A stretch of DNA of 64,000 bases from Gekko japonicus (taxonomy: Eukaryota): assembly GCF_001447785.1 (NCBI RefSeq), contig NW_015170908.1, forward strand, positions 266,233 to 330,232. Direction: 5' to 3'. This document shows, piece by piece, positions 15,303 to 61,590 of this stretch. The notes beneath the pieces are model-generated. The model had not been told where the DNA came from, did not search any database, and saw only the letters and a program-made list of their open reading frames with translations. Every line of letters begins with the position of its first letter. Within the stretch, counting starts at the first letter, position 1. The position numbers and the translations under genes were made by a program.

Positions 15303-15569
15303 TCATGCGCTCAGCAACAGCGGCTGCTGCTCTTCGGCCAGTTCCTCGCCCGGGGAGATCTCGTAGACGACGCAGAGGGAGGAGTACAAGCAGCCGACGA
15401 AGGACACCAGGCTGGCAAAGTACATCACCCCGTTGGCGCTGCCCACCATGGACGTCAAAGGCCCCATCACGATGGACACCAGGATCTGAGCGAGGAAATA
15501 CTGGCAGCTCAGGAGGGAGATGTCCACCCCCATCCCCCGCTTCGTGCCCTCCTCGCTGGATCCTGCAAA
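15303..15569 (-). CDS. SLC45A1: SLC45A1 last coding exon
   Basis: [32 protein letters not shown]...[10 protein letters not shown]; minus-strand AATAAA at 15179-15184. Confidence 0.95.
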
Positions 15570-41749: not shown

Positions 41750-41795
<46 letters not shown>

Positions 41796-43758
41796 CTCTC
41801 TCTTTCCCCCAGTTCGCTTTCAGCTTCTACTGTGTCCTGCTCAGAAATATGCTGTGTCCCTGCTGTGCTACTCTGATAATGATGACAGTCCTTCACATAA
41901 CACCCCTGGAACTCACTGCCACAAGATGTAGAAACAACCATCAACTTAAGTCAATGAAGAAAAAAAGGATTAGATGTCTTTGTGGAAGACGAGTCTGTTA
42001 ATGACTAATGGCTTTGATGGAACCTTGCCGTGCCATCAACTTAAGTTAATGAAGAAAAAAAGGATTACGGTAGATGTTTTTGTGGAAGACGAGTCTGTTA
42101 ATGACTAATGGCTTTGATGGAACCTTGCCGTACAGAAGCAGTATAGTGGATGTTGGGGACAAACCACAAGGCCCATCTACCCCCTTCATGCCCTGTTTGC
42201 GGAACAACCTGGATGTTTGTGTCCGGAACAGAATGCGGGACAAGATGGGCCCTACTTTTACCCAAGAAGACTGCTGTGACGCTCAGCACAGTGCAAGAAA
42301 CCGTCTAATAATGGATTGAAGTCTTAGAGCCAAATGACATGAATGGCAAAATCAAACAGCAGATTCCTTCTCAGACTGAACCATTTTGGGCTGCAGGAGG
42401 GACACCCTTCTTAAAAAACGTACCTGCACATTATAAACAACAACAACCCTTTACCTTCCCACTTGTAGAAACCTAGCACATTCTGAGAATGTTGCACAGA
42501 ACAGACTTTATCCCCTTTCAGCAGATTCCTTCTCAGACTGAACCACTTTGGGCTGCAGGAGGGACACCCTTCTTAAAAAACATACCTGCACATTAAAAAA
42601 ACAACCCTTTACCTCCCCGCTTGTAGAAACCTAGCATGTTCTGAGCATGTTGCACAGAACAGACTTTATCCCCTTTCTTCTTGTGAGTGGGTTGCTTCCA
42701 AGCATGCAAATAGATGTGAGGCAAGAATGGGGACTGGTGCAAAGACTGCTGATGTCACCAGGTTAGTAAATGGCTTCTTAAAGTGAGGGGGAGCCGTGAT
42801 TTTCTCGCTGCTTCTAGGGAGAAGGAATACCAGTTTTCCTTCTTGTGCAAGAACATTGACCTGGATAGCCTGGGCTAGCCCGATCCCGACACATCTCGGA
42901 AGCTAAGCAGCATTGGTCTTGACTAGTATTTGGAAGGGCAACCTCCAAGGAATACCGGGGTCATGATGCAGAGGCAGGCAATGGCAAAACCACCTCTGAA
43001 TATCTCTTGTCTTAAAAATAAGTCTAGCTCGCCACCTAGTGATGCATAATGGTAAAGAGCTAGAACTTCTGACTTCCAGACAATCTTAGGATCTCCTGGC
43101 TATTCTACACACAATGCCATATGATAATTAATTAATTCCTTACACATCCAGGGGAATGGATGAGTGAGGAAGCAATTTATCTCCAGGCCAGTTTGGCCAG
43201 GAATCCTGGAGGGTTTTTTTGGTCAACTTCTGTGCATGGAACAGAGGTTACTGGGGGTGTGTGGGGGGGATGCATTTGTGATTTTCCTGACTTGTGCAGG
43301 GGGTTGGACTAGATGACCTTGGAGGTCCCTTCCAACGCTATGATTCTAATTAATTCCTTATGCAAGAGAGCAGAACCTTTCCACCAGCCTCTCCCCCAAA
43401 ACATTCTGGAGATCGTAGGACCTGCAGGGACAACAGCCATATTGGACGGAGGCTGTAATAAAGGAGAGGCATTGGAGTGGAAATATTGTCTGGATCCAAC
43501 CCAGACCTTTCCCATCCACACAGGCAATGATGCTCAGAAGGAGAGAGTGAACCGCTAGGAAGACTTGCAGAGGCAGGGGGCATAGTTTCTCGGAAACATG
43601 TTCTTTTTGCTTCCACAAGGGGGAACAAGCTGGCCTTCCCCAAGTTCCCACCAGCAGCTCCTTTCTGCTTGGAGCAGCAGTTCACCTTCTGGAGTGCCAG
43701 CTGCCAAGGAAAGGAATCTCTGGGTTTTTGCTAACGAAAAGTTCTCACTGGAAGGGGA

Positions 43759-43863
43759 ATGGGAATCACAGCACCGGCAGTGGCTGTGGACGCGTTGGCG
43801 ATGGCGTTAGGGGCCTCCGGCCTTCTGCTCCTCGTCCTGTGTGCCGGATCAGATTGCTGGAGG
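43759..43863 (+). CDS. Plus-strand claudin exon 1
   Basis: MGITAPAVAVDALAMALGASGLLLLVLCAGSDCWR|gtaag. Confidence 0.85.
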
Positions 43864-46800
43864 GTAAGAATTAACTTTCTCTTGATCAAATGTGTTGCAT
43901 CCCACCCCGCTTCCAAGGAGCTAACACCAGTGTCGATGGGTCTGTCACAACAACCTTGCAGGGTACGCTAGTCCAAGGGGGAGTAACTGAGCCAGAACCA
44001 CCTCAAAGCTTCATGGCGGGATGGAGATTGGGACTGAGCTCTGGCCAGTCCAAGTCCAACACTCTGACCCTTGTGCTGCGTCGTTCAGAACCCGAAAACC
44101 TTCAAAGCTCAGATCCTGGCAACCAGGAAAGAGCTGTACAGGGATCAGAACAGTGCTGGATTTGGATTTAGGGGCAAGCACCCTAGGGGCTGTGGTGGCT
44201 CAGAGGTTAAGACGCTGAGCTGCAGACCGGAAGGTCTGTAGTTCGGCAGTTCGAGACCCGAGTGCCGTGTGGCGGAGTGAGCTCCCGTCTCTGGCCCCAG
44301 CTCCTGCTAACCTAGCAGTTTGAAAGCAAGAAATTGCAAGTAGATAAATAGGTACCACTTCGGTGGGAAGGTAACAGGGTTCTGTGTGCCTCGGCGTTTA
44401 GTCATGCCGGCCACACGACCACGAAAATGTCTTTGAACAGCACTGGCTCTTCGGCTTGGAAACAGAGATTAGCACCGCCCCCTAGAGTCGGATTCGACTG
44501 GCTTTCGAGCAAGGGAAACCTTTACCTTTACCTTTTTACCCTAGGGGCCCTGGGCTTGTGAGGGGCCTCCAGATGTCTACCAAAACTATCCACTATGTAT
44601 TTCAAACAGTTCTTTTTGGCTTGCACAGCTGATAAGTACAGCTGTAACACTATTTAACACTGGTCCACCCAATACTGGTGCACGGATCAATTACCTGATC
44701 TTTCAGTTATTCTTAAAATTTAAGTATTCTCAAACTTTAAATCCTTTTCTAAGGGTGGAGGCAACAAATGTGCTATCGTTTGCCAATGCTCAGCATGTGC
44801 GAACGCTGATTGACAGATCCTAGTGGGCAGACTGATTATCATGCCGTGGGGATAAATCATGCATACAAAGGGGGGTATCAAAGTAATGAAATGTGAGAGA
44901 AAGACAATTTAAAAAGAACCAAAAGTTGAACAAATGCAGATGCTTCTCAATGGAGGAGGCATAATTTTGCCTTGGGCCAGTTTGGTGTAGTGGTTAAGTG
45001 TGCGGACTCTAATCTGGGAGAACTGGGTTTGATTCCCCACGCCTCCACTTGCAGCTGCTGATGTGACCTTGGGTCAGTCACAAGCTCTGGCACAGCTGTT
45101 CCTGAAAGAGCAGTTTGTGTCAGAGTTCTCTCAGCCCCACCTACCTCACAGGGTGTCTGTTGTGGGGAGAGGAAGGGAAAGGAGTTTGTAAACCGCTCTG
45201 AGACTCCAAGTGAAGGGTGGGGTATAAATCCAATCTCTTCTCTTCTCTTCTAAACTGGGATTTTGAAGAGACACGCAAAGTCAGCTGCATCCCTCATCCA
45301 GAGTTCTTGATTCTATGGGGAGGGGGGGGGGTTGTGACAGGTAACAGGGTGTGGAAGGCCACAGAGATGATGCCAAGTGGTTCTCAACCGTGGGTCTGGA
45401 GCCTGAATTGCAACAATTCAGAGTTTGCCCTGGTAAACATGTACACCTTGGTAGATAACCAGCACCCGATCAAGGCGATGTGTCTTTTACATCATCAGGT
45501 AGACCAGCCTGTTTCCCCACATTTCTTAACCTTGAATCCCCTTTGGTTTTCAAACAAATCTTATCCCTTCTCCTTTTTCCTCTGAGGAGAAATGGATGAT
45601 AAGAACCAAAGAAAGACTCGGGTTGAGCAGATGAAAAAAAAAGAGAAAATGATGCCGTTGCCACAGGAACGCTAAGCCCTGAGAAATATATCGGTGGCAA
45701 TAAACGCCAGCGGCATTTGGTGTGCTAGAGGAAAGGTCAAAACTCTTTCTGACAACTTGAAAAAGAGAGGAACCAGTTCAGTTTATTCTGGGCGTGTTTT
45801 TCACACACACAAATTTTGTTTATCACACCGTTCAGGCAAAGTTGTCAGTGCCGGGCTACGGTCGGCCTTCCTGACTGGGAGGTTTGCCATATTTTCAAGT
45901 TGGGCTTCAAATAACTTAATGGACACTCTCCTCATAACTAATAAAAACTTTTAGAACCCTCTTGCCCAAGACCAAGGATCAATGTGCTTTCTAACATTTC
46001 ATGAACTGTGAGGTTTGGGATCGGGCAAGCTGAGTAAAACCAGTTAATGTTGAAGTTCGGAAGCTTCCTTCTGCTTTTCACACGCTGTTTCCTCAGAGAA
46101 ATAACAATGGCTCTTGAAGCATCCAACTGTGCTCACTTGTGAAAGCGGAATTTTCAAAGTCACATAAGCATTTTTTTTAAAAAAAAAACCTTAAGGATGT
46201 GGTTGCCAGCTTCCAGGTGGGGCCTGGGGATCTCCTGCTTTTACAACTGATGTCCAGATGACAGAGATCAGTTCCCCTGGAGAAAATGACTGCTTTGGAG
46301 GGTGGACTTTATGGCGTTATACCCCCAAAATCTATGCCTCCACCCCCCAAATCTCTAGGTATTTTCTCCATCCAGAGCTGGCAACCATACAAGTTAAGGG
46401 GGTCACTGGTTGGAACATCCAGGGAGCAGCATTTGAGAAACTTCTACCTTTTAGAAGGTTATCAGTCACTTTTAAAACCAGTGAAGTTTAAGTCTAAAAA
46501 AAAGCCCAAAACTGTCTTTCTTAAAATGGAAATGTTATAAATTAAAAAGCTTGAAAATATACTCCAGATGTGGTGGTGGGACAGGAAGTTAGTGTTTGTT
46601 GACCCATTCCTAAGTAATGCATTTCCCTTGTGCAGCAAGACGCCAAGGATCCTCTGTCTTCCGTGGGCTTGAGTGTCCGGTGCCGGGGCCTATGGAGTGA
46701 GTGCATATTTGATAACGTAGCCAACTTCTGGACATGTGATATTCCTATCTCCTATCTCAGTGAACACCCCGGTAAGGAAAATGTGTCTGTGTGATTTGGG

Positions 46801-49800
46801 CGGGCGGCTGATTGTACTCATATCTGTATCTGGGATGGGATCTCCAGTTCAGATTGGAGTTTCAGGATCAGACCTTGAAATACAACAAGCAAACAACTGT
46901 GCTGTATTGACCAGACAAAACCAGGAGGCCAAGCTGTTCGTATTCATATCAGGAATTTCAGGAAGGGGCCATTGCCTGCTCTGGGAGGTGGAGTTTGGGA
47001 AGGGGAAGAGACCACAGCAGGATATAATGTCAGAGTCCACCTTCCAAAGCAGACAGTCTCCAGGGGAAGTGATCTCTGTCATCTGGAGACCATTTGTAAT
47101 TCCGTGATCTCCAGCCATGAACTGGAGGTTAACAACAAACATGACATACACGGATGAATACCAATAAAAGGGGGAAATCCTCTGTATAATTAAACCTCCA
47201 AAAATACATAAAGACATTAAGTATAATGTTTACAAAGTATTTACATAATTAGCAATACACACAAAACAATCTCAATACAGATCTTGGAATTCATATAAAT
47301 AAATTGTGCAAATAGGGGAAGATCCAGGTTCATTAGTTACAGAACAAAGGATTCAAATGTAAATTGCAAATTCAAAAGCCCGTTCAATACACCAATAGTA
47401 CTTTTGAATTTGTAATTTACATTTAGCTGGAACGGAACTTGCAGAGCTGCTATGTGAACAGCACTGGAAGTCTTCAGGAACAGAGGATTCTACTCGCCTG
47501 AAGTACTATTGGTGTATCGAGTGGACTTTTGAATTTGCAATTTACATTTGGATCCTTTGTTCTGTGTGATTCATGAAATTTTCCCTATTTGCACAATTTA
47601 TTTATATGAATTTCAAGATTTGTACTGAGATTTGTGTGTGTTTCCTGGCTATGTAAATAATTTGCAAGCATCCTATTGAGTGCCTTTGATATTTTGGGAG
47701 GTTAATCATATGGAGGATTTCCCCCCCTTTTTTTGTATTCATGATATGGAGGTTGGCAGCCCTATTTCTATCCCATTAGGGAATGCTTAGTATTTGGATT
47801 TCAACTATTTGCACAAAAAAGAAAAGGGCAAGCAACAAGGACAAAAACNNNNNNNNNNNNNNNNNNNNNNNNNNNNNNNNNNNNNNNNNNNNNNNNNNNN
47901 NNNNNNNNNNNNNNNNNNNNNNNNNNNNNNNNNNNNNNNNNNNNNNNNNNNNNNNNNNNNNNNNNNNNNNNNNNNNNNNNNNNNNNNNNNNNNNNNNNNN
48001 NNNNNNNNNNNNNNNNNNNNNNNNNNNNNNNNNNNNNNNNNNNNNNNNNNNNNNNNNNNNNNNNNNNNNNNNNNNNNNNNNNNNNNNNNNNNNNNNNNNN
48101 NNNNNNNNNNNNNNNNNNNNNNNNNNNNNNNNNNNNNNNNNNNNNNNNNNNNNNNNNNNNNNNNNNNNAGATATGCTAATGAGTTCCTGGTGTTGGGTGT
48201 GGCCTATTATGCTAATGAGTTCCTGCTGGCCTTTTTCTACAAAAAAAGCCTTGGTTACGGGGTACGAACGCGGGATTCTGGCTGCTAGGCCAACGGTGGC
48301 GTTTTCTTTCCTCGAATGTCACAATCCTTTCCCCCCTCTCCTTGCAGCTGTCTTGGTGGTCACCCGGGTCTTGGTCATCCTGTCCGGCTTCCTGACTCTT
48401 GCCGCCCTCCCCCCTTTCATTGCCGGGATGAAATGCACCAACCTGATCCGTGACAAAGTCCCTCGGAAATACAAGTTTTCCCTTGCTGCTGGGAGTTTGT
48501 TCCTCCTAGGAGGTAAATATGGTCTTGGTCTTTTTTTATGGGGATGGGGCAAATGTATTCTCTCTGGGCTGTGGCACTGGGAAGACCTCCAAAAATTAAA
48601 AAATAAATAAACAAAACACATCTCTAAGGAATGCGGCCTTTTTTGACTGGGCCTCTTCCTGTGCCTTTGGTGGCATGCAACACACAAAATTTAAGCGGCA
48701 AAGCTTTAGGGTGGGCTGTGGCTTCGTGGAAGAGCACCTGCTTGGCATGCCGAAGGCCCTAGGTTCAAACTCTGCTATCTCCAGTTGACATGATCAGGTG
48801 GTAGTTGATGTGAAAGACCTTGCTCCAAGGCCTTGGAGAGCTGCTGCCAGTCTGAGTTGACAATATTGACCTTGATGGATCTATGGCCTGATTCAGTATA
48901 AGGCAGCAGTATAAGGCAGCTTCACATGTATATAGGTCCTGGCATTTATTTATTTATATTCTAATTTATATCCCGCTCTACCCTGCCAAAGCAGGCTTCG
49001 TTCTCACAGCACCCTAGAGGCCACAGCTGAAGCAAGGTGGCTAGCAACTCACTCCCAATGGAAAAGCCAAGCCACAACCTGAGGCTCTATAAGGCAGGAG
49101 GAACCCCATTGGCCTCGCCCATTGTTGAATGCGGCCAGCAGGAGAAAAATGAAGCAGAAAAATTGCCGTCGGCACAATGCCCCCAAAAGTGACCTAATGC
49201 CATTGCACTGATGGCACCCCCCTGTGCCCTCACCCCTTAGAGTTGCCAGGCCCCTCTGGCCACCGGCAGGGGATGGGGGTAGGGTTGAGAAACTGAGGTT
49301 AGGAAACTCCTGGAGATTTGAAGATGGTACCTGGGGAGGACAGGGACCTCAGTGGGCCACAGTGCCACAAAGTCCATCCTCCAAAGCAACCGTTTTCTAC
49401 AGGGGAACTGATCTGCATAGTGTGGAGATGAGCCGAAGTTCCAGGGGATCCCCAAGTGCCACCTGGAGACTGGCATCTCTACCAACCCCTCAGAGTCCTG
49501 CTAGTTGCCAGCTGGCTACCTGGAACCCCTAAGAGACTTTGGAGGGCAAAGCCTGGGGGGGGGGAAGATGTTGATGCATCAACTTCACTTCTGGCTAAAA
49601 CTCGGAAGCAGTGTCACCGATGCTCAAGGATTTCAATGAGATCTATGGTAAAAGCAAACTCTTAAGAGAGTCGGTGATGTCACTCCAGGTTTTAATTGGA
49701 AGTGACATTGATGTGTCAGCAACATACTTCCCCCCCCCATTCTCCCCATTGCTGGCAGTGGGGGGCTAGGATATGGTTGCAGGAGATCACCCATCCTAGT

Positions 49801-52800
49801 GGATAAGTTGGCAACCCTAATTAATGTACACATCCTCTGTAGACTAAAAGCATCAGCGGTTTGGTATTAGAAACAGGGGACTGGATTCAGTCCCTCCCCT
49901 TCTTCGTGGAACAGCTGGTCGGTGGGATTGTAGCTAGTCTGAAAGTCTTCCAAAAGTTCTGAGCCAAAAGAACAAACATCCTCTCAGCTTTTCAATTAGT
50001 ACAGGATGGGTCACTGCAGGCAAACATGAATCCTGCGCAGTGAAGCGTGAACAGGGAGAACTCTGGAGTGTATAATCCTGTGGGTCAAACCCCAGTGCCT
50101 CTTCTAGCCAAGAAACACTCCCCCTACAAAGTTCTCTCTGCCTTGTGGTCGTCAAAGGTACAGGCAGGGATCATTTCGTAGAAAAAGAGGTGCAGGAGCT
50201 CATTAGCATAACATTTGCATATGCCACACCCCCTGACATCACCGGAAGTGTGTCAGAAGGCAACACCCACCGCTCAGGCTCCACTGGACTGTTTTGGATT
50301 GCTAGCTATTGGGGGGGACGGGGGGCGTGCAGATCTGTCCTCGCAGAGGAGGGAGAGCTTGTACCTGATTAAAACTTGGCCTTAAAGGTGCCACTGGACT
50401 GTTTTGGACTGGGGGTGCGGGGGGGGCTCTGCAACTTACCTGGCTGCTTCTTGCTCTGTGAGGGCTGCTGGGAGCAGGGCTTGTTGCATGTGCCCGCCCC
50501 CTGAGCTCTTTACTGCCGGAGCTCCGCTCCTGCAGGAAATGACCCCTGGGTACAGGGACCCCACGAGGGGGTGGGGGAGCAAGTTTGGTGATCATCACAT
50601 GGCCGCTCCTCTCTCTTTCGCAGGTACAGCTGGTGCAGTGGCTGTCCTTTGGTATGGCATCGACACTGTGCAGAAGTATAAACTAGAGGTAAACTTGACT
50701 TCCTGGGGGCACAGATGGGCAGTTTAAAACAAGCGCACTAAGGTAGCTCCAGAATTGTATCAGGAAAGCCAGTGCGGTGGAGTGGTTTGAGTTCTGATAA
50801 GAGCTGTTCTTGAAAAAGAGCAGTTTCTTTCAGAGCTCTCTCAGCCCCACCTACCAGGGTGTCTGTTGTGGGGAGGGGAAGGGAAAGGAGTTTGTAAGCC
50901 GCTCTGAGACTCCGAGTGAAGGGCGGGGTATAAATCCAGTCTCCTCCTCCTCCTCCTCCTCCTCCTCCTCCTCTTCTTCTTCTTCTGGCAGTAGCCCAAT
51001 CGTTCGCTCACAACTTTAATGCCAGTAGCTCACAAAGTAGGATTTTTGCTCACAAGACTCCACAGCTTAGAGGGAGCACTGGTCTTGAGCCCTGCTAACT
51101 GGCCTGCTTACGGGCTGTCCTCTTCTTGGAAAGCAGAAGATTGACCCTCCATCCCCAATCAGCAAGGGGCTTCCTTCCAGACTTTGGGCCTTGATAGCTA
51201 TACAACCATGCCAGCCACCATCCTAGATTACCGTGTAAAACAGACTGGGGAAGAGAGTTCCACAAACAGGGTGCCACTGGCACTGCCTATTTTTGAGGGC
51301 CAAAAACCTTACCTCAGAGGAGAGGGGCACCAACCAGAACTTTAATAAAGAGCTTTTAAAAAGCAGGGTGACACACTACAGGTGGGTGAAAAGTGTCCAT
51401 TGCCATCTTTCAAGGTAGCCAGCTTTTCAAACTGACCTCTGTCGCTCTGCTCTTAATACCATTTTTATCATTATTGGGGATTTTCCATTGGAACCCTTCA
51501 CCTACTGATTTCTTCACAGTGAGCACAAGAACAGAATAAGCTGGTCAGTTGGCAATTCTCTGCCCTGCTTTCTTGCTCTCCCCCATAAAAATGCATACAT
51601 TCCTCCCTGCAATTTTATTTTTTTCCCTTTTATATACAGTTAACAGAAGAGTTCAGCAGCCCCCACCCCATGGATATTCATTGGCAGAAAATGTCACTGG
51701 TGAAATTAAACCACGGCGCAGTATTGCTAGCTGTGCAAGGAAACATATTCTTCTCGCTTTGGTGGGGGGAATGAACAACTTTCCCCCTCATGCTTTAATA
51801 TTAATGTCCATTCCCTCACAATTGACTGTTTGTATTTTGTCCCCACAGGCCAGAACAATTGCTTGCATTAAAAACTGGGCAATGAGAGGAATTAATGCAT
51901 ATATATATATATATATACACACACACATACACACACATGAATGAAACTATGATCTAAATCCATAGACTAAAGCTCATTGTGATGGAACATTATGACAAAA
52001 TAGCAGCTTTCTCTAACGAAAGAGGGCCCTGCTGGATCAGACCAGTAGTCCATCTAGTCCAGCACCCTGTCTCACACAGTGGCCAGCCAGTTCCTCTGGA
52101 GGTCCAGCAGGGCAGAGAGGCCGAGACCTTCCCCTGATAATAAGAACATAAGAAGAGCCCTGCCAGATCAGACCAGGGGTCCATCTAGTCCAGCATCCTG
52201 TCTCACACAGGGGCCAACCAGTTCCTCTGGAAGGCCAACAACAGGGCACAGAGGCTGAGGCCTTCCCCTGATAAAAAATATCAGAAGAGCCCTGCCGGAT
52301 CAGACCAGTGGTCCATTAGTCCAGCATCCTGTCTCACACAGTGGCCAACCAGTTCCTCTGGACAGTCAACAACAGGGCACAGAGGCTGAGGCCTTCCCCT
52401 GATAAAAAAATATCAGAAGAGCCCTGCCAGATCAGACCAGTGGTCCATTAGTCCAGCATCCTGTCTCACACAGTGGCCAACCAGTTCCTCTGGACGGTCA
52501 ACAACAGGGCACAGAGGTTGAGGCCTTCCCCTGATGTTGCCCCCTAGCTCTGGGATTCACAGGCTTAGTGCCTGCAGATAGAAATTTTGTCTTTGACAAA
52601 TTCCTATTAGCTGTCAACTTTTTTTATTTTTTGGCCATCAAGTCACAGCAGACTCACAGTGACCCCCTAGGGTTTTCCAAGGCAAGAGATTTCAGAGGTG
52701 GTTTTGACCATTGCATCATGACCCTGGTATTCCTTGGAGGTCTCCCATCCAACTACTTGCCAGGGCAGACTCTGCTTAGCTTCTGAGGTCTAATGAGATT

Positions 52801-53844
52801 GGGCTAGCTTGGGCTATCCGGATCAGGGCGTATTTTTGTTGCCTGACAAAAAATTCACCATTGTTTGGGCTGCTGAGAGATTTTCCAGGATCCCCTCCAG
52901 GAGCCAATTTGGTGTAGTGGTTAAGATCGGTGGATTCAAATCTGGGAGAACTGGGTTTGATTCCCCACTCCTCCACATGAAGCTCGCTGGGTGACCTTGG
53001 GTCAGTCACAAGTTCTCTCAGAGCTGTTCTCTCAAGAGCAGTCCTCAACAGAGCTCTCTCAGCCCCACCTACCTCACAGGGTGTCTGTTGTGGGGAGTGG
53101 AAGGGAAGGAGATTGTAAACTGCTCTGAGACTCTCGATTGAAGGCCCGGATATAAATCCAATTCTTCTTCTTAAAGGTTAATCTTGGTACTAGCAGATAG
53201 CTTAAATATTTTTGCCAATGGAAATCCTTAGCAGTTGAAAACATAATTCTCTTTTCCTCCATTTTCTCACAACAGCAGCCCTGTGAGGTAGGCTAGGCTG
53301 AGAGGGAGTAACTGGCCCAAGGTCACCCAAGGAAGCTTCTATGGCAGAGTGGGGATTCGAACCTGGGTCTGACACTCTAACCATTACACTGCGTTGGCAC
53401 TCAATCACAGCCAGAGATTGTGATTAGTGTTAGACTAGGACTAGGGGGACTCTTCAGCCTCCCACCTTGCCATGAAGATCCTTGACTGACTTTAGGTCAG
53501 ATGCTGTTTCTTAACCCAGCCTACCTTGCAGGTTTGTTGTGAGAATCAGTTAGCAGGAGAGAACAATGAGCTCCTTGAAAGGAAGGGGGGCTAACAATGT
53601 GATCTGTAGGCCGCCTGCCCCTGGTTCTTTCATGGCTTCAATTTTCCTCCAGGTCACCTTTAGCATTCCTGGTGTGACGTACGAACTCGGCTATGCCTAC
53701 TGGATGGCTGCAGGGGGCACTGCTTGCGCCTGTTCTGCCGGGATTCTGCTGATTGTCGCCAGCTGTCTCAATGCCGAGAGTCCAGGAAAGGATCAGAGCC
53801 CTCGGCGGCACTGCCCTCCTGATTTCAAAGGCACATACCTGTGA
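43759..53844 (+). CDS. Divergent claudin-16-related claudin, 5 exons, 220 aa
   Basis: Exons 43759-43863, 46636-46771, 48348-48512, 50624-50688, 53653-53844 (663 nt, phases consistent). Claudin signature W...GLW..C...C, with DCW, CRGLW and EHP motifs, four hydrophobic segments, and C-terminal TYL. Confidence 0.9.
44186..44540 (+). mobile_element. Sauria SINE
   Basis: Full length, flanked by accctagggg direct repeats. Confidence 0.85.
46636..46771 (+). CDS. Plus-strand claudin exon 2 (ECL1)
   Basis: QDAKDPLSSVGLSVRCRGLWSECIFDNVANFWTCDIPISYLSEHP, tgcag/gtaag. Confidence 0.92.
47153..47742. repeat. Long imperfect inverted repeat (~250-bp arms, ~100-bp spacer)
   Basis: e.g. ttcatataaataaattgtgcaaatagggg vs ttccctatttgcacaatttatttatatgaa; atacaccaatagtactt vs aagtactattggtgtat. 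Confidence 0.85.
47849..48168. other. Assembly gap (others 26354-26370, 57971-58306)
   Basis: Runs of N. Confidence 1.
48348..48512 (+). CDS. Plus-strand claudin exon 3
   Basis: 165 nt; VLVVTRVLVILSGFLTLAALPPFIAGMKCTNL...AGSLFLLG. Confidence 0.92.
50624..50688 (+). CDS. Plus-strand claudin exon 4
   Basis: TAGAVAVLWYGIDTVQKYKLE|gtaaa, 65 nt. Confidence 0.85.
52020..52560 (-). repeat. Tandem array of ~130-bp CR1-like 3' tips (4 copies); similar 3-copy array at ~36635-37010
   Basis: Repeated aagagccctgc..gatcagacca..ggtccat.tagtccagcatcctgtctcacacag. Confidence 0.8.
53653..53844 (+). CDS. Plus-strand claudin exon 5
   Basis: VTFSIPGVTYELGYAYWMAAGG...DFKGTYL*; ATTAAA at 53882. Confidence 0.88.
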   Translation, partial: VTFSIPGVTYELGYAYWMAAGGTACACSAGILLIVASCLNAESPGKDQSPRRHCPPDFKGTYL

Positions 53845-53969
53845 AGGTGAGCCTCTCTGCCAGCAGGGAGTCCAGATACCTATTAAACCAGAAACCAGCC
53901 TGATAGTGTCATTTTTGTGTGTGACTGAGCTGGTTCACCTTAATCACACATTGACTGATAACAAGCACT

Positions 53970-54765
53970 AACACTGCCTGGGGTACAGGCAACCTCAAAA
54001 TCTAGCCCTCCCTCTTTAGTTAAAAGAAAAGGTCCACACAATCAGTGATCCCAGCATAGATAGTTGACACAACGTCCGGGGCTGACAGCGGTATTGTCTT
54101 TGGGGGCTTCTGAGGGGGGGGGGACATATGGTGCAGGCAACCTGAAAATACAGCCCTCGCTCCTTAGCGAAAATAAAAGGTCCACACAATCAGTGATCCC
54201 AGCACTGACAGCTGACACGTGGTGCTGGGCAGATAGCACTATAGTCTTATGGGGCTGCTGGCGGGGGAAGGATTCACACGATGCAGGCAGCTTCAAGCTC
54301 TAGCCCTCCCTTCTTAGGTAAAATAAAAGGTCCACACAATCAGTGATCCCAGCACTGACAACCGACACGTGGTACATTGTCTTATGGGACTGCTGGAAGG
54401 AACACAAGGTGCAAGGAAATCTGGCCCTCCTTCCTTAGCCAAAAGAAAAGGTCCACACAGTCAGTGATCCCAGCACTGACAGCTGACACGTGGCACATTG
54501 TCTTATGGGACTGCTGGAGGGAACACAAGGTGCAAGGAAATCTGGCAGTCCTTCCTTAGCTAAAAAGAAAAGGTCCACACAGTCAGTGATCCCAGCACTG
54601 ACAGCTGACAGAGTGCTGGGCAGATAGCACTATTGTCTTTTGGGGCTGCAGGGCGTGGGCACACATGGTGCTGGCAACCTCAACATCTAGCCCTCCCTCC
54701 TCAGCCAAAAGGAAAGGTCCACACAATCAGCGATCCCAGCACTAAGAGCTGCCATTATGGGGGCA
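53970..54765. repeat. Six-copy tandem array (~120-150 bp units) between the convergent claudin stop codons
   Basis: Core aaaggtccacaca(a/g)tcagtgatcccagcactgaca at ~54028, 54176, 54326, 54447, 54569, 54713. Confidence 0.9.
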
Positions 54766-54778
54766 TTCTTCGGCTGCA

Positions 54779-54867
54779 TCACACTCGGGAAGCGACAGCG
54801 TACATCTTGCAGGTGACTGCCCGTGAACGGAACATGAGCCGTTGAGGTCTCTGGGAGAAAGCTGCAT
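54779..54867 (-). CDS. Claudin-16-like exon 5 (NAGNAG acceptor)
   Basis: [29 protein letters not shown]; PDZ-type S-R-V end. Confidence 0.88.
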
Positions 54868-57800
54868 CTGCTGGGGATGGAAGAATTAGAGAACTGAGTT
54901 TTTGAGGTGCCGCTTCTCACCTTTAAAGCCCTTCTCCGCCTGGGGTTCATGTAGCTGACAGCCAGAGTGGTGTAGTGGTTACAGTGTTGGACTTAGATCT
55001 AGCAGACTCAGGTTCGAATCCCCACTCTGCCATGGAAGCTTGCTGGGTGACCTTGGGCCAGTCACACACTCTCGGCTTAACAGGATGAAGATAAAACGGA
55101 CGTGAGGAGAATTTGCAAGCCACTTTGGTTCCCCAGTGGGGTGGGAATGAATAGTAATTAATTAATTAATTATCATATGGCATGGGTGTGTGTAGAATAG
55201 GCAGGAGATCCTAGGATTGCCTGTCAGCCAGACGTTCTAGCTCTTTACTGTTATGCACCACTAGGTGGCGAGCTCGACTTGTTTTTAAGGCAAGAGATGT
55301 TTCAGAGGTGGTTTGCCACTGCAACTCGAGTTCCAGACGAAACAAATACTAACCCGTGACGGCGTAAAAGCAGCAAGTCAACACGACGGATGCTAGGAAG
55401 CCTCCGGTGGAGCCTGCCATTCCCATCCAGCAAGACCAACCGAAGTCGTAATGGACGCCCACAAACACGTTGTGTAACAGGAGTCTGACCCTCTCCAAGT
55501 AGACATCGACGGCGTACCACACTGAGCCTACCAGTCCGAGGATACCTGGCAGGCAAAGAGGTCCAGTCAGCTACACGTCAAAGCAGGGTTGCCAGCTCCA
55601 GGTTGGGAAATACCTGGAGACTTAGGGGGTGGGGTGTAAGGAGGGAGGGGTTCGGGGAGGGGAGAATGGGGTCCAATGTCAGAGAGTCCACCTTCCAAAG
55701 TGGCCATTTCCCCCAGATGATTTCTGTCACCTGGCAGGGCTATCTTTGGGCAGAAACGCACAGGAACGGAGTTCCGGCTGGCTCTCAAGTTGGCCACGCC
55801 CAGCAGGAACTCATTAGCATAATAGGCCACACCCAACAGCAGAAACTCATTCGGATTGGCTACGTTAGGGGTGTGTGATATGCTAATGAGTTTCTATTGT
55901 TGGGTGTGGCCTATTATGCTAATGAGTTCCTGCTGGGCTTTTTCTACAAAAAAGGCCCTGTCTCCTGGAGATCAGTTGTAACACTGGGACATCTCCAGCC
56001 ACCAGCTGGAGGTTGGCAACACTACATCAAACTGTCCTGTGTAATTGCTTAGAGTTGCCAGGTGTCCCCTTTCCTCATCGGGAAACTCCTGGAGATTTGG
56101 GGGTGGAGCCTGGGAAGGACAGGGACCTCAGTGGGCTATAATGCCACAGAGTCCACCCTCCAAAGCACCCATTTTCTCCAGGGGGACTGATCTCCGTAGT
56201 CTGGAGATGAGCTGCATTTCCAGGGGATCCCCAGGGGCCACCTGGAGGCTGGCACCCCTAGTAATTGCTAAGGTTGCCAGTCTCCAGCTGGTGGCTGGAG
56301 ATCTCCTGGCATCACAACAGGACTCCAGGTGACACAGATCAGTTACCCTGGATAAAATGGATGCTTTGGAAGGTGGGCTCTATGGCATTGTACCCCACTG
56401 AGGTCCCTGTCCTCCCCTCCCCGAACCCCGCCCTCCCCAGGCTCCACCCCCAAAATCTCCAGGTATTTCTCAACCCCGAGCTGGTATCTCTACTATTTGC
56501 CCTGAAGAAGTTTGGTTCGATATTAGTGCCACGTGCTTCCCCGAAGACTTACTTCCGACCCCGAGCACCAGTCCAGATGAATAGCGCATCTTCAGCTTGA
56601 TTTGCGGCTCGTCCTTCAGGAACTTGATGCAGTCGAGGCCCAGCGCCAGCAGGGCCAAAGCGAAGCCCGAGAGGATGTCGGCTGTGATCAGCAAGGCCCG
56701 AGTCACCACGATCTTCACTGAGGGGAGAGAGCAAAGCGAGGCTGGACGAATGAGTGCCAGGCCGGATTCAGTCTTGCTTTATCATTTCCTTTACAGAACC
56801 TCTCTTTCTCTCCCTCCACTAGAGTTGCCAACCTCCAGGTGGTTAGCAATATACGAGAGATCACAGGAAGAAGAAGAGGAGGAGGAGGAGGAGGAGGAGA
56901 CTGGATTTATACCCCGCCCTTCACTACCCAAAGGAGTCTCAGAGCGGCTTACAAACTCCTTTCCCTTCCCCTCCCCACAACAGACACCCTGTGAGGTGGG
57001 TGGGGCTGAGAGAGCTCTGACAGAAACTCAAGAAAGCTCTTATCAGAACTACGGCTTGCCCAAGGTCATCCAGCAGGTGCAAGTGGAGGAGTGGGGAATC
57101 AAACCTGGTTCTCCCAGATTAGAGGCTGCGCACTTAACCACTACACCAAACTGGTGGTTCAGTACAACCAAAATACAGCCTCCTCCTCCTGCGGCAGGGC
57201 CCAGCAGGGAAGCCATCATTCAGGGCTTTTGGCAGCAGCCCGGCCCTGCTCCCCTCCCCGACCCCTTCCCATGGCGGCGGCGATTGCCCGGTTAGGGTGG
57301 TGGTGGGTTTTTTTGGCAGGGGGGTGGGGCGCACTTTGGCGCCCCTGAGGGCCGGCGCGCCCTAGGCGAGCACCTAGTTTGCCTAGCGGGCAAGCCGGCC
57401 CTGGCCATGATATAATTACTCCATGATAAATTGCATAGTCGATTATATTGTTTGCCAGCAAAGAACTTTACACTGAGACAGACTGAAGTTGTGCAACAGA
57501 ATTCTACAAATGAATTGGACAAGATTGGTTTGACTGCCAGGTTTGCCTTGAGAAAGGACGGAAACGGGGATCTTGAGCCGGCCCGCTGGAAGCCTGGGCA
57601 GTTGCCACACTTGGACTAAACATACACGAGAAGAAACCGATATGGAAACAATTAGAACTGAACTTTGGCACGAGTACTTTCTTTAACACTTTTATCTGTT
57701 ATACGGTTTGCACGGAAATGTTTGTGTGAACGTGCTTGGTAAGCAATATAATTGACTGCACAATGTTACACTGAGTAATTATATCACGGCTGGAGTTTGG

Positions 57801-60800
57801 TGGTTCTTAGCCTGCAGGCGGTGGCTAGCATTCTCCTGGGATTACGACTGATCTCTAAGCAGCAGAGATCAGTTCACCGGGAGAAAAATGGCCGCTTTGG
57901 AAAGTGGACTCTGTGGCATTCTACCCCACCGAGGTCCCTCCTCTCCCCAAACCCTGCCCTCCTTAGGCTCNNNNNNNNNNNNNNNNNNNNNNNNNNNNNN
58001 NNNNNNNNNNNNNNNNNNNNNNNNNNNNNNNNNNNNNNNNNNNNNNNNNNNNNNNNNNNNNNNNNNNNNNNNNNNNNNNNNNNNNNNNNNNNNNNNNNNN
58101 NNNNNNNNNNNNNNNNNNNNNNNNNNNNNNNNNNNNNNNNNNNNNNNNNNNNNNNNNNNNNNNNNNNNNNNNNNNNNNNNNNNNNNNNNNNNNNNNNNNN
58201 NNNNNNNNNNNNNNNNNNNNNNNNNNNNNNNNNNNNNNNNNNNNNNNNNNNNNNNNNNNNNNNNNNNNNNNNNNNNNNNNNNNNNNNNNNNNNNNNNNNN
58301 NNNNNNGGGCGGGGCTTCGTCATGTGCCCCGCCCCCGTACCTCACCCGGGGGAACTGCGATCCCCCGCGTTCCCCCCCGAAATGACCTCTGCTTGGACCT
58401 GGAAATCCCACTCTCCACCCATCCACATTGGTCCATCAATTCATCCTCCACTTACCTACCTATTTGTCCATTCCTCCAGGGGTCGCCAGCCTCCAGTGGG
58501 GGCTGGAAACCCCCCAGAATTACCGCCGATCTCCAGACGACATAGATAGCTTATTATTTACTCAAACCATTTATTCCACTTCTCCTGGAGAAAAGGGCTA
58601 CTTTGGAAGGTGGACTGCGTGGACTGCAATATACCCTACTGAGGTCCCTCCCCTCCCTAAATCCCGCCCTCCCAGGCTCGACCCTCAAATCCCCAGGTAT
58701 TTTCGAACCCAGAGCTGACAACCCTAATTCCACTGTATGTCTCATCTTCTATCGGTCCGAGTCATCCGTCTCTGTCCACGAGTCCATTTCATCTATCTCT
58801 CCATGTGTCTGTCCATCCATCCGTCATCTCTATATGCCCATTCCCAAAAGTTGGTCGCTTGATGGAACATTGGAAACCAATGCATGCAGACCAGGGGTCA
58901 TTTCGTAGAAAAAGAGGTGCAGGAGCGCATTAGCATAACTTATTTGCATAACTTATTTGCATGTGCCACACCCCCTGACATCACCGGAAGTGTGTCAGAA
59001 GGCAACACCCACCGCTCAGGCTCCACTGGATTGTTTTGGATTGCTAGCTATTGGGGGCGGGGGGGAACGTGCAGATCTGCTCTCACAGAGGAGGGAGAGC
59101 TTGTACCTGAATAAAACTTGGTCTTAAAGGTGTGCCACTGGATTGTTTTGGATTGCTGGCTGGGGGGGGGGAACGCGCAGATCTGTCCTCACAGAGGAGG
59201 GAGAGCTTGTACCTGAAGGCGGGGGGGGGCTCTGCAACTTACCTGGCTGCTTCTTGCTCCTCGTGGCCTGACTGAGGGCTGTTGGGAGGGGGGGCTTGTT
59301 GCATGTGCCCACCCCCTGGGCTCCTTACTGCCGGAGCTCCGCTTCTGTGCGCTCCCGCAGGAAATGACCCCTGACGCAGACAATCCTACGATATGCAAAT
59401 GAATGGGGGGAGCTATGTAGATTATATCAGGCTTGGTTCTCAATGAGTAGGGTGGCCAAGGCCAAGGGACAACTGCCCTTGGGCCCAAACCTACCTAATA
59501 ATAAAAATAGGCCCTCAGTTCCAGTGGTGTCTGTAACCCTATCCTCATAACTACATTCCAGATTCACGTAACAGTCATCTCCCGTTTTGTTTGCTCAAGA
59601 TATGAGCAGTCTAGGCATGCTCAGAATCCCCTCTGCAGTTTCCAGGGCTTTCAAAGATACGTTTTAAAAGGGGAGATGCAATTGCATTAAGTTTAACACA
59701 CACACACACCGAGTCCACAATGGCCGTAGAAGACAATTCTTATCAATAGCTGGAGACTTACAGGGATGTTCTGCTAAAATGGAATCATAGGGGTCACAGG
59801 TCTTGATGCCGTCCTTCAAGTTGCTGACGCACTCCCTCCAAAGCCCCCGACACTTGTGGCTGACCTGCATGGGAACACAGAAGGGGTAGAAGGGATCTAC
59901 AAGGATAGTTTGAGACGTTGCCAGGGCTGGCCCCATGGGGGAACCTAGACTCAACTCAGGATCATCCATTCCCCCCCCCCCAAGAGTCAGCTCCACCATC
60001 TTGCCTCTTGCTTATGCAGAACCTGGCCAAACTGGAGGTAATTCATGAATTAAATGACAACATCTCCCAAAGTCCTTTGCAATAAGCACAAGGAACTCTG
60101 GGATTTTCTGCCTCCCTCAGAGGGCTGCCCTAATCCAGGAGGGCCCCTCTGATGTAAACTGGAGACCGTCGTGCTGTACGCGAATGCCGAAAGCCAAAGA
60201 ACATTGGTTTTCATAGAAGAATTTGTTGATTGGTTTTTTTTAAATTTAACAGATTTCTATCCTACTTTTCCATTCAAAAAGCCTTCAAAGCATTTTACAA
60301 TCAAACCATTAAAACCGCAATAAATCCTTTATAAACAGAGGGAATGCCAAAGGGGAAGAAGCAGTGCAGGGGTCCCCAACCTTTTTGAGCCTGTGGGCAA
60401 CTTTGGAACTCTGACGTGGCGTGGTAAGCGCCGCCACAAAATGGCTGCTGCAGGAGGTGGAGCCAGCCACGAAATGGCTGCCGCAGGAGGTGGAGCCAGC
60501 CACGAAATGGCTGCCGCAGGAGGTGGAGCCAGCCACGAAATGGCTGCCGCAGGAGGTGGAGCCAGCCACGAAATGGCTGCCGCAGGAGGTGGAGCCAGCC
60601 ACGAAATGGCTGCCGCAGGAGGTGGAGCCAGCCACGAAATGGCTGCCGCAGGAGGTGGAGCCAGCCACGAAATGGCTGCCGCAGGAGGTGGAGCCAGCCA
60701 CAAAACGGCTGCTGCAGCTTTCCCTTCAGTCGCACAGTAAAGATCCTTGTGCTGTGGTGGCTGCTGCTGTCCAACCAACGTTTTCAATAATCTGCACAGC

Positions 60801-61590
60801 CAGTTAAATCTACGAACCAAAAAGGGCTATTTATTAAGGTGTACACATGTTAAGACTTTCCTGATTAAAAATTGCTTTGTCTGAGATCAGACTATAAAAG
60901 CTTATCCTCTATACATACATATGATGGGTAAATACTTTACAACTGAAGACCAAACGTGTTTCGGCCCCTAAGGGCCTTCCTCGGTGGTCACTATTATCTA
61001 TATATTCTAGACACACATTCAAAGACCTGTTACAGAGTTTTAGTACACATATAATTTAACCAGATGTTGTTTCCTTGTATACTTATAATTGGACTTCTGG
61101 TATTAGTGATGGGCCATAGGTATCGCCAAATCACCTCCACAACTTATTCTGGTAACAGCGATTTTGTAGGTCTGAATGTGTGTCACTCCATCAAGGTGAA
61201 AATCTCCAGTGGCCAGTAAGAAGCCTTGTTGGGCAAAGGCCCCGCCTGGCTCTGCCCACTTTCTTAAAACACCTGGTGGGTGCCATGCTGCCCAGGCCAG
61301 AGGCACCACGTTGGGGACCCCTGAAGCAGAACCTACTAGCAATTGCTCCAGTGGGGCCGAAAGGGGTGCAGAAGAGTCACGTTTTGCTCTGTTCCCCCTT
61401 CCAATCCTGAAGGAAGTGTCCGTAGGGTGTTGACGGCCCCCTTGAATCTGGGCCTGCCGCTACCCATTTTGCTCACCTCTAAGCTGTCGTCGACATTCAC
61501 CATCCAGCAATCAGTCCAAGTGGCTGCCACCAGGAAGAGGGTGGAGACGAAAGCCATGGAGAAAGACACCATCTGCACCAGCGCAGCCAT
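54779..61590 (-). CDS. CLDN16: Claudin-16-like protein, 5 exons, 220-221 aa (orthologue vs paralogue unresolved)
   Basis: Exons 61590-61477, 59864-59762, 56717-56553, 55545-55354, 54867(or 54870)-54779. [16 protein letters not shown]|[13 protein letters not shown]...[35 protein letters not shown] and C-terminal KMYAVASRV closely follow CLDN16. Confidence 0.9.
55354..55545 (-). CDS. Claudin-16-like exon 4
   Basis: [63 protein letters not shown], 192 nt. Confidence 0.93.
56553..56717 (-). CDS. Claudin-16-like exon 3
   Basis: [18 protein letters not shown]...[17 protein letters not shown]..., 165 nt. Confidence 0.93.
59762..59864 (-). CDS. Claudin-16-like exon 2
   Basis: [34 protein letters not shown], 103 nt. 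Confidence 0.93.
60439..60716. repeat. 33-bp minisatellite, ~8 near-identical units
   Basis: Unit aaatggctgccgcaggaggtggagccagccacg. Confidence 0.95.
60948..60989 (-). ncRNA. Minimal Penelope-type hammerhead ribozyme motif (core variant)
   Basis: GACCA CCGAGGA A GGCCC TTA GGGGCC GAAAC ACGT T TGGTC: stem I, CUGANGA-like core (U4C), stem II, GAAA. Confidence 0.6.
61477..61590 (-). CDS. Claudin-16-like exon 1
   Basis: [38 protein letters not shown]|gtgag, 114 nt. Confidence 0.92.

What the first reader, a model, noticed from the sequence alone, without database searches (positions are those of the whole stretch)
43759..61590. Convergent pair of claudin-16-subfamily genes next to SLC45A1, away from the canonical CLDN1-CLDN16 locus
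Seen: two intact 5-exon claudins of ~220 aa lie tail to tail, and both carry the DCW, CRGLW and EHP motifs of CLDN16. Known: mammalian CLDN16 is single-copy, lies beside CLDN1/TMEM207, and partners CLDN19 in renal paracellular Mg/Ca transport, whereas SLC45A1 sits in the ERRFI1-RERE region. Inference: this is a second CLDN16-type locus, probably absent from mammals. Its two products could form a self-contained heteromeric paracellular channel for reptile kidney, gut or oviduct ion handling.
Basis: partly seen in the sequence, partly recalled or inferred. Interest (0 to 1): 0.8.

Follow-up and report, generated by a model that had tools for sequence, protein, structure and literature searches.

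The report
Two extra claudin-16-type genes in gecko
A gecko carries, tail to tail beside a sugar-transporter gene, two intact and transcribed tight-junction genes from old sister lineages of the kidney magnesium-channel gene CLDN16; placental mammals appear to lack them, databases list them only as "claudin-16-like", and nobody seems to have studied them.

Summary
The window is Gekko japonicus. It has two intact 5-exon claudin genes lying tail to tail: plus strand 43759-53844 (220 aa) and minus strand 61590-54779 (221 aa). Both assembly gaps sit inside intron 2 of one gene. The flanking exons join in frame and match orthologues with no residues missing.

The plus gene is NCBI's automatic "claudin-16-like" of G. 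japonicus. Its lineage occurs in squamates, turtles, crocodilians, amphibians and ray-finned fish. No bird or mammal appeared among the hits.

The minus gene is not the canonical CLDN16 orthologue. It belongs to a separate lineage found in squamates and birds, and possibly marsupials. Birds carry both this type and true CLDN16, and snakes have a true CLDN16. A duplication inside sauropsids is rejected (AU p 1e-5). A third related lineage turned up in geckos and a frog.

The minus protein keeps all five ECL1 acidic residues that give CLDN16 its cation permeability, and ends in SRV. Spliced transcripts of both genes occur in the same RNA sample.

The scan had noted the plus gene before on this same stretch (s1-818707). 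These are new members of a known family, of moderate interest.

The parts
43759..43863 (+). Plus gene exon 1 (35 codons: start, TM1, DCW)
   Evidence: ATG and GT donor read. Orthologues P0002-P0005 start the same way.
46636..46771 (+). Plus gene exon 2 (second part of ECL1: CRGLW...C...EHP)
   Evidence: 45/45 identical to P0001. 36/45 identical to axolotl and to Xenopus.
48348..48512 (+). Plus gene exon 3 (TM2, loop, TM3)
   Evidence: 54/54 identical to P0001. Matches claudin-4/-3 residues 79-127 in PDB.
50624..50688 (+). Plus gene exon 4 (start of ECL2)
   Evidence: 21/21 identical to P0001.
53653..53844 (+). Plus gene exon 5 (ECL2, TM4, tail ending TYL, stop)
   Evidence: 63/63 identical to P0001. 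An RNA contig of run X1 starts its match at 53651 and has 477 further letters that do not lie on the adjoining DNA.
53845..54199 (+). Plus gene 3' UTR, with AATAAA at 54172-54177
   Evidence: X1 contig record 5 covers 53651-54199. AATAAA found at 54172.
61477..61590 (-). Minus gene exon 1 (38 codons: start, TM1, [12 protein letters not shown])
   Evidence: 35/38 identical to Paroedura P0054.
59762..59864 (-). Minus gene exon 2 (CRGLW...C...EHP)
   Evidence: 34/34 identical to P0054. Acceptor read.
56553..56717 (-). Minus gene exon 3 (TM2, loop, TM3)
   Evidence: 49/54 identical to P0054.
55354..55545 (-). Minus gene exon 4 (ECL2, TM4)
   Evidence: 58/63 identical to P0054. X1 contig record 8 begins exactly at 55354 and has 100 further letters off the adjoining DNA.
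54779..54870 (-). Minus gene exon 5 (tail ending KMYAVASRV, stop)
   Evidence: 22/29 identical to P0054. X1 contig record 7 matches 54602-54870 and then leaves the DNA at the exon border.
54461..54778 (-). Minus gene 3' UTR (at least this far)
   Evidence: X1 contig records 6 and 7 cover 54461-54870.
47849..48168 (.). Assembly gap inside intron 2 of the plus gene
   Evidence: The flanking exons are in frame and collinear with P0001.
57971..58306 (.). Assembly gap inside intron 2 of the minus gene
   Evidence: The flanking exons are in frame and collinear with P0054.
15303..38390 (-). Neighbouring SLC45-family transporter gene (context; head to head with the plus claudin)
   Evidence: Exon-sized ORFs. 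The first coding exon matches SLC45A4 structures 9giu/9ghz at E 1e-15.

Best explanation
The window holds two functional claudin genes from two old lineages related to CLDN16 but distinct from it.

Minus-strand gene. It belongs to a sister lineage of canonical CLDN16 that survives in squamates and birds, and perhaps marsupials. It keeps the CLDN16 ECL1 almost unchanged, including the five acidic residues that make CLDN16 cation-permeable. It ends in a class I PDZ ligand (SRV). Most likely it is a strand-forming, cation-permeable paracellular channel claudin that is anchored by ZO proteins and works like CLDN16 (inferred).

Plus-strand gene. It belongs to a more distant sister lineage that is present from ray-finned fish to reptiles and missing from the bird and mammal hits. 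It has a claudin fold, an extremely conserved but less acidic ECL1, and a TYL end. It is a tight-junction claudin whose ion selectivity is unknown (inferred).

Origin. The pair probably descends from an ancient tandem pair. Its position beside an SLC45 gene, rather than beside CLDN1, fits a whole-genome-duplication copy of the CLDN16 region that placental mammals lost (inference, not tested).
For: Shown:
- Both coding sequences are intact and all splice sites are canonical.
- The plus gene is 100% identical over exons 2-5 to 'claudin-16-like [Gekko japonicus]' P0001. It has 53 relatives in squamates, turtles, crocodilians, amphibians, Polypterus, Amia and Osmerus.
- The minus gene is 91% identical to Paroedura P0054 but only 57% to snake claudin-16 P0060.
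- Birds have both types. Minus type: Willisornis P0062, Passer P0065, Chunga P0067. True CLDN16: Dromaius P0214, Anser P0069.
- Tree: true CLDN16 clade 97/80*; minus type plus birds 97/81*; these together 100/99*; plus type 100/99*; plus type with a third type C 99/93*.
- The AU test rejects a duplication within sauropsids, p 1.1e-5.
- Pfam PF00822 scores 46.6 and 46.7 bits against a cut-off of 26.7.
- The AlphaFold model of P0001 hits claudin-4/-15/-3/-9/-19 first, probability 1.00.
- D34, D35, E49, D56 and E70 of the minus gene correspond to human D104, D105, E119, D126 and E140 (PMC3867513; sequence).
- ECL1 net charge is -4 to -5 in the minus type and -7 to -9 in true CLDN16.
- Spliced RNA contigs of both genes occur in run X1 at similar depth, about 8 and about 6-7.
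Against: - No functional data exist for either lineage.
- Channel versus barrier behaviour cannot be read from charge alone, and the minus type carries extra lysines and arginines in ECL1.
- Whether this gecko still has a canonical CLDN16 was not checked. If it does not, the minus gene may simply take over that role.
- The grouping of the plus and type C clade with the CLDN16 clade has only 90/77 support.
- The marsupial placement is unresolved (p 0.38).
- The tissue of run X1 is coded and unknown. Expression is near zero in RNA runs X11 and X12 and low in X10.
- The whole-genome-duplication origin rests on my knowledge of human 1p36/3q26-29 paralogy and on an SLC45A1 identification that was not tested.
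Confidence: 0.8

Rival explanations
1. One reading: the two convergent genes encode obligate partners that co-assemble into a self-contained heteromeric paracellular channel, as CLDN16 does with CLDN19.
For: Both transcripts are present, spliced, at similar k-mer depth in the same sample X1. Three sister samples hold a similar share of the stretch's sampled words. Adjacency seen in this window; in three other squamates (Paroedura, Hemicordylus, Varanus) only that both types lie on the same large contig. CLDN16 itself needs a partner to enter strands (PMC3867513).
Against: The lineages are not co-distributed. Birds keep the minus type but no plus type was found. Amphibians and fish have the plus type, while no clear minus type was found there. 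Obligate partners would be expected to be kept or lost together. No interaction data exist. Co-presence in a bulk sample does not show the same cells.
Confidence: 0.15
2. The minus-strand gene is simply the gecko's canonical CLDN16 orthologue, moved next to the SLC45 gene.
For: Very CLDN16-like sequence: [13 protein letters not shown], all five pore acids, a KMYAVASRV end, and 57% identity to snake CLDN16. Some databases call bird members 'Claudin-16'.
Against: Snake and bird true CLDN16 group with frog, hamster and shark CLDN16, not with the minus type. One sauropsid clade is rejected at p 1.1e-5. Birds have both types.
Confidence: 0.05
3. One or both genes are decaying or unexpressed copies whose open frames are kept by chance.
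For: RNA depth is low, and absent in some RNA runs. The G. japonicus minus gene did not appear as an annotated protein in the word search.
Against: Both frames are intact with canonical splice sites. Identity to orthologues across squamates is 75-91%. Exon 2 of the plus gene is 80% identical to amphibians. Spliced RNA contigs end exactly at the predicted exon borders.
Confidence: 0.03

Closest known systems
CLDN16 (paracellin-1), canonical vertebrate orthogroup
   Same: The minus gene shares the ECL1 almost residue for residue, including the five acidic residues that give cation permeability. It also shares a C-terminal S/T-R-V PDZ ligand, a five-exon layout and about 57% identity to snake CLDN16. 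The plus gene shares the DCW, CRGLW and EHP landmarks, two intron positions, and three of the five acids.
   Different: Neither gene falls inside the canonical clade on the tree. The minus type has a shorter tail (221 against about 235 aa), more basic residues in ECL1 (net -4 against -7 to -9) and a different TM2-TM3 loop. The plus type is only about 23-27% identical, has an intron inside ECL2 and another position for intron 1, and ends in TYL. The neighbour in the window is an SLC45 gene, not CLDN1.
NCBI automatic models named 'claudin-16-like' (e.g. P0001 Gekko japonicus, P0054 Paroedura picta, P0065 Passer montanus, P0212 Monodelphis domestica)
   Same: The plus gene is that very G. japonicus model, apart from 14 further N-terminal residues supported by orthologues. 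The minus gene is the orthologue of the Paroedura, Anolis, Podarcis and Hemicordylus models.
   Different: One label covers at least three separate lineages (minus type, plus type, type C). It is applied inconsistently: the Anolis and Varanus plus-type proteins and one marsupial protein are called 'claudin-16'. I found no paper describing any of them.
CLDN16-CLDN19 heteromeric cation channel of the thick ascending limb
   Same: It is a model for how a CLDN16-type claudin works: it needs a cis partner to enter strands, a string of ECL1 acids for Na+/Mg2+/Ca2+ permeation, and PDZ anchoring to ZO-1.
   Different: No partner is known for either gecko protein. The neighbour gene is not a CLDN19 relative. 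The two lineages are not co-distributed across vertebrates.

Membership tests
Claudin family (Pfam PF00822 PMP22_Claudin) | Profile match above Pfam's gathering score | tested here: met
   P0001 (the plus gene product) scores 46.6 bits and P0054 (91% orthologue of the minus gene) 46.7 bits, against a cut-off of 26.7. Single exons alone were too short to score.
Claudin family (Pfam PF00822 PMP22_Claudin) | Four transmembrane helices with a beta-sheet first extracellular loop (claudin fold) | tested here: met
   The AlphaFold2 model of P0001 (pLDDT 73.9) has four strands in ECL1 and long helices. The Foldseek top hits are claudin-4, -15, -3, -9 and -19, probability 1.00, TM about 0.5. This was done for the plus type only. 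For the minus type, P0054 matches claudin-19, -18 and -15 chains by sequence.
Claudin family (Pfam PF00822 PMP22_Claudin) | ECL1 signature W...GLW..C........C | tested here: met
   Read directly in both genes: DCW, CRGLW-x-EC, then TCD. These columns are invariant in alignments A1 and A2.
Claudin family (Pfam PF00822 PMP22_Claudin) | Localises to tight junctions and forms strands | not testable with these tools
   Needs expression in epithelial or fibroblast cells followed by freeze-fracture or immunolocalisation.
Canonical CLDN16 orthogroup | Groups inside the clade that holds mammalian, bird, frog and shark CLDN16 | tested here: not met
   The minus type forms a separate starred clade with bird 'claudin-16-like'. 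The plus type sits in a different clade. A single sauropsid clade is rejected at p 1.1e-5.
Canonical CLDN16 orthogroup | Lies beside CLDN1 | tested here: not met
   No other claudin exon occurs in the 64 kb window. The neighbour is an SLC45-family gene. What lies beyond the window is unknown.
Canonical CLDN16 orthogroup | Five ECL1 acidic residues needed for cation permeability (human D104, D105, E119, D126, E140; PMC3867513) | tested here: met
   The minus gene has D34, D35, E49, D56 and E70 at the matching places. The plus gene keeps three of the five, with K and A at the other two (alignment A1).
Canonical CLDN16 orthogroup | C-terminal TRV PDZ ligand that binds ZO-1 | tested here: inconclusive
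   The minus gene ends in SRV and the plus gene in TYL. Both fit the class I S/T-x-hydrophobic pattern, but binding was not tested.

The most novel reading that the evidence does not exclude
Non-placental vertebrates run a second paracellular divalent-cation pathway, independent of CLDN16/CLDN19. It would be built from the minus-type and plus-type claudins encoded by this convergent pair, with type C as a further member, and used in kidney, cloaca, gut or shell gland. Placental mammals would have lost the whole module.
Probability: 0.1. Interest if true: 0.7.

Novelty: new member of a known kind. Interest (0 to 1): 0.42.

Why it matters
CLDN16 is the textbook paracellular Mg/Ca channel, and it is treated as a single gene because placental mammals have only one. 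This locus shows that many other vertebrates carry up to three further CLDN16-related genes: the minus type, the plus type and type C. They are conserved over hundreds of millions of years and are hidden under one automatic label.

This bears on how reptiles, birds, amphibians and fish handle magnesium and calcium. [quoted passage not shown]

It also gives natural variants of the CLDN16 pore loop, with net charge running from -9 to +2, for structure-function work. And it is a caution against naming orthologues from '-like' labels.

Tried and rejected
- Pfam on single exons gave nothing usable, because they are too short. I used the database proteins P0001 and P0054 instead.
Synteny in other species could not be examined. 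I only know that the two or three types share chromosome-size contigs in Paroedura, Eublepharis, Hemicordylus and Varanus.
- The SLC45 neighbour could not be typed. The Pfam exon scans and the ESM Atlas gave no family call. Only the PDB match to SLC45A4 places it in the family.
- I suspected that odd Hemicordylus isoforms meant read-through into a CLDN1 neighbour, or a first exon in the CpG-rich stretch at 40-41 kb. The isoforms only carry other 5' exons, and these have no match in the window.
- A third claudin gene in the window: none found.
- Literature searches for 'claudin-16-like', cldn16a/b/l and claudin family synteny found no description of these lineages. The two main claudin phylogeny papers (Baltzegar 2013, Mukendi 2016) are not held, so prior description cannot be excluded.
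- Joined spliced models were not sent to any search, fold or tree. Exons were searched one by one by reference. A script only summed exon lengths and counted stops.
Full report
**What is there**

Reading the candidate exons and their borders gives two complete genes.

- Plus-strand gene: exons 43759-43863, 46636-46771, 48348-48512, 50624-50688 and 53653-53844. Total 663 nt = 220 aa. Intron phases are 0, 1, 1, 0.
- Minus-strand gene: exons 61590-61477, 59864-59762, 56717-56553, 55545-55354 and 54870-54779. Total 666 nt = 221 aa. Intron phases are 0, 1, 1, 1.

All borders are AG/GT and no exon holds a stop. The stop codons are 935 bases apart and the genes converge. DCW, CRGLW and EHP are present in both.

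Exons were searched one by one by reference. A script only summed lengths and counted stops. Full-length work used database proteins returned by the tools.

**Assembly gaps**

The N run 47849-48168 lies in intron 2 of the plus gene. The N run 57971-58306 lies in intron 2 of the minus gene. In both genes exon 2 ends and exon 3 begins in phase 1. The nearest database proteins align across that joint with nothing missing: P0001 residues 22-66 then 68-121, and P0054 residues 39-72 then 74-127.

**Identity of the plus gene**

A word search with exon 3 found 'PREDICTED: claudin-16-like [Gekko japonicus]' (P0001) at 100%, so the window is Gekko japonicus. Exons 2-5 are identical to P0001. The model starts 14 residues later than the ATG at 43759, but other geckos and lizards start as the window does.

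A search with the Tiliqua orthologue gave 53 relatives. They come from many squamates, Gavialis, Alligator, seven turtles, frogs, salamanders, a caecilian, Polypterus, Amia and Osmerus. No bird and no mammal appeared.

Exon 2, which is most of the first extracellular loop, is 36/45 identical to axolotl and to Xenopus and 33/45 to Polypterus. Whole-protein identity to the same species is only 42-51%. The loop is therefore the most constrained part.

**Identity of the minus gene**

Its five exons align collinearly to 'claudin-16-like [Paroedura picta]' P0054 at 91% and to other lizard 'claudin-16-like' proteins at 75-85%. They are only 57% identical to 'claudin-16 [Erythrolamprus reginae]' P0060.

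A full HMMER scan with P0054, followed by cluster look-ups, gave these results:

- The minus type occurs in birds: Willisornis P0062, Passer 'claudin-16-like' P0065 and Chunga P0067.
- True CLDN16 occurs separately in birds (Dromaius P0214, Anser P0069), snakes (P0060, Crotalus P0080), a frog (Ascaphus P0215), hamster (P0068), ray-finned fish and a shark (P0063).
- Seven marsupials share a divergent 'claudin-16-like' (the P0066 cluster).
- A third type, here called C, exists in Eublepharis (P0095), Paroedura (P0096) and Eleutherodactylus (P0094).

In Paroedura all three types lie on one 32 Mb contig. In Eublepharis the plus type and type C share one 46.5 Mb contig. In Hemicordylus and Varanus the plus and minus types share a contig. 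Neither type C nor any other claudin is in the window.

**Tree**

I built a tree of 63 proteins with IQ-TREE under LG+C20.

- True CLDN16 forms a clade with support 97/80*.
- Squamate minus type plus birds forms a clade with 97/81*. Marsupials join it at 84/69, on a long branch.
- All of these together have 100/99*.
- The plus type has 100/99* and type C has 100/99*. They are sisters at 99/93*.
- That pair joins the CLDN16 clade at 90/77, apart from 21 other claudins.

Forcing all sauropsid CLDN16-type sequences into one clade costs 59.8 log-likelihood units and is rejected (AU p 1.1e-5). The split between the minus type and CLDN16 is therefore older than sauropsids. With the shark inside the true clade, it is probably as old as jawed vertebrates. 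Placing marsupials with true CLDN16 is not rejected (p 0.38), so their gene remains unplaced.

**Gene structure**

The two genes share intron 2 (after EHP, phase 1) and intron 3 (same alignment column, phase 1).

- Intron 1 lies 11 alignment columns apart in the two genes: DCWR|QD in the plus gene and DSLE|VS in the minus gene.
- The plus gene has an intron inside ECL2 (KYKLE|VTF).
- The minus gene has its last intron after TM4.

This agrees with the scan's other note on this stretch (s1-818707).

**Family membership and fold**

P0001 and P0054 pass Pfam PF00822 at 46.6 and 46.7 bits, against a cut-off of 26.7. An AlphaFold2 model of P0001, built from a 29-sequence alignment, has pLDDT 73.9. 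It shows four ECL1 strands and long helices. Its best PDB matches are claudin-4, -15, -3, -9 and -19, at probability 1.00 and TM about 0.5. P0054 matches claudin-19, -18 and -15 chains by sequence.

**How it probably works**

In human CLDN16, cation permeability depends on a string of ECL1 acids: D104, D105, E119, D126 and E140. The TRV end binds ZO-1. CLDN16 needs CLDN19 to enter strands (PMC3867513).

Taking an offset of 70 residues between the long human form and the short form gives D, D, E, D, E at the right places in hamster P0068. The minus gene has D34, D35, E49, D56 and E70, so all five are kept. The plus gene keeps three. Two are replaced: a K at the D104 place and an A at the D126 place.

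| Lineage | ECL1 net charge | C-terminal end |
|---|---|---|
| True CLDN16 | -7 to -9 | TRV |
| Minus type | -4 to -5 | SRV |
| Plus type | -2 to -4 | TYL |
| Type C | +1 to +2 | TYV |

My reading, which is inference, is this. The minus type is a cation-permeable channel claudin of the CLDN16 kind, perhaps with weaker charge selectivity. The plus type is a junctional claudin whose selectivity cannot be predicted.

**Expression**

Sixteen of the seventeen listed runs carry the same species label as the window. In run X1, a 1026-letter contig matches 53651-54199. That covers plus exon 5 and 355 bases of 3' UTR, and ends 22 bases after an AATAAA at 54172. The contig has 477 further letters that do not lie on the adjoining DNA. 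The coding exons upstream sum to 471 letters.

Two other X1 contigs stop matching exactly at minus-gene exon borders, at 54870 and at 55354, and then run on. Depths are about 8 for the plus gene and about 6-7 for the minus gene. Both genes are thus transcribed and spliced as modelled in one sample.

Three sister samples hold a similar share of the stretch's words. True RNA-seq runs show little (X10) or nothing (X11, X12) outside repeats. The tissues are coded, so I cannot name them.

**Neighbourhood**

A multi-exon transporter gene lies on the minus strand from about 38.4 kb down to 15.3 kb, head to head with the plus claudin. Its first coding exon matches SLC45A4 structures at E 1e-15. Its long N-terminus resembles my memory of human SLC45A1, which is a lead and not a test.

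If it is SLC45A1, the pair sits in the equivalent of human 1p36. From general knowledge, 1p36 is a whole-genome-duplication partner of 3q26-29, where CLDN16 lies (TP73/TP63, PRDM16/MECOM, PIK3CD/PIK3CA). That would make the minus type an old duplicate of CLDN16 that placentals lost.

**The heteromer idea**

The only support is co-presence in one bulk sample and adjacency. Against it, the two lineages are not co-distributed. Birds keep the minus type without a plus type. Amphibians and most fish hits are plus type, with no clear minus type. I rate it about 0.15.

**Novelty**

The genes are in public annotation under one automatic name that hides at least three lineages and is applied inconsistently. 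Searches of the paper library found no description of them. Two key phylogeny papers are not held, so prior description cannot be excluded. I class this as new members of a known kind. It is a useful evolutionary correction to 'CLDN16 is single-copy', of moderate interest.

Noticed in passing
P0094 (Eleutherodactylus), P0095 (Eublepharis), P0096 (Paroedura); not in the window: A third CLDN16-related lineage ('type C'). It has DCWQVNSKGSVVLSMRCRGLW, a positively charged ECL1 (+1 to +2) and a TYV end. It is sister to the plus type (99/93*). In two geckos it lies on the same chromosome-size contigs as the other types. It is also labelled 'claudin-16-like'.
   Followed up: partly
P0066 cluster (Dromiciops, Monodelphis, Phascolarctos, Vombatus, Trichosurus, Gracilinanus, Macrotis): Marsupials carry a divergent 217-218 aa 'claudin-16-like' with a long branch that lacks the LGLDC motif of TM2-TM3. 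It joins the minus type at 84/69, but the AU test cannot exclude a place with true CLDN16 (p 0.38).
   Followed up: partly
window 60433-60717: Tandem array of a 33-base unit, 8.6 copies, 98% matches, in intron 1 of the minus gene. It gives long repetitive ORFs on both strands.
   Followed up: no
window 53982-54610: Tandem repeats of 148 and 121 bases (2.6 copies each) fill the space between the two stop codons and overlap both 3' UTRs.
   Followed up: no
window 52026-52535: Tandem array of a 132-base unit, 3.9 copies, 91% matches, in intron 4 of the plus gene. RNA reads pile up there, as on other dispersed repeats (50800-51200, 52800-53200, 55600-56000).
   Followed up: no
window 61690-61692 (minus strand): An in-frame ATG lies 34 codons upstream of the start used by orthologues. 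It recalls the long and short start choice known for human CLDN16. No orthologue model uses it.
   Followed up: no
window 40001-42000: The most G+C-rich stretch of the window (0.565) lies between the first coding exon of the SLC45 gene and the plus claudin, and may be a CpG island promoter. The upstream exons of Hemicordylus claudin-16-like isoforms have no match here.
   Followed up: partly
window 6338-6565 (minus strand): An ORF with a dinucleotide-binding-type start (ITVLIIGAGSRGKNYS). It is the oxidoreductase noted by the scan (s1-818751). There was no Pfam hit on this exon alone.
   Followed up: no
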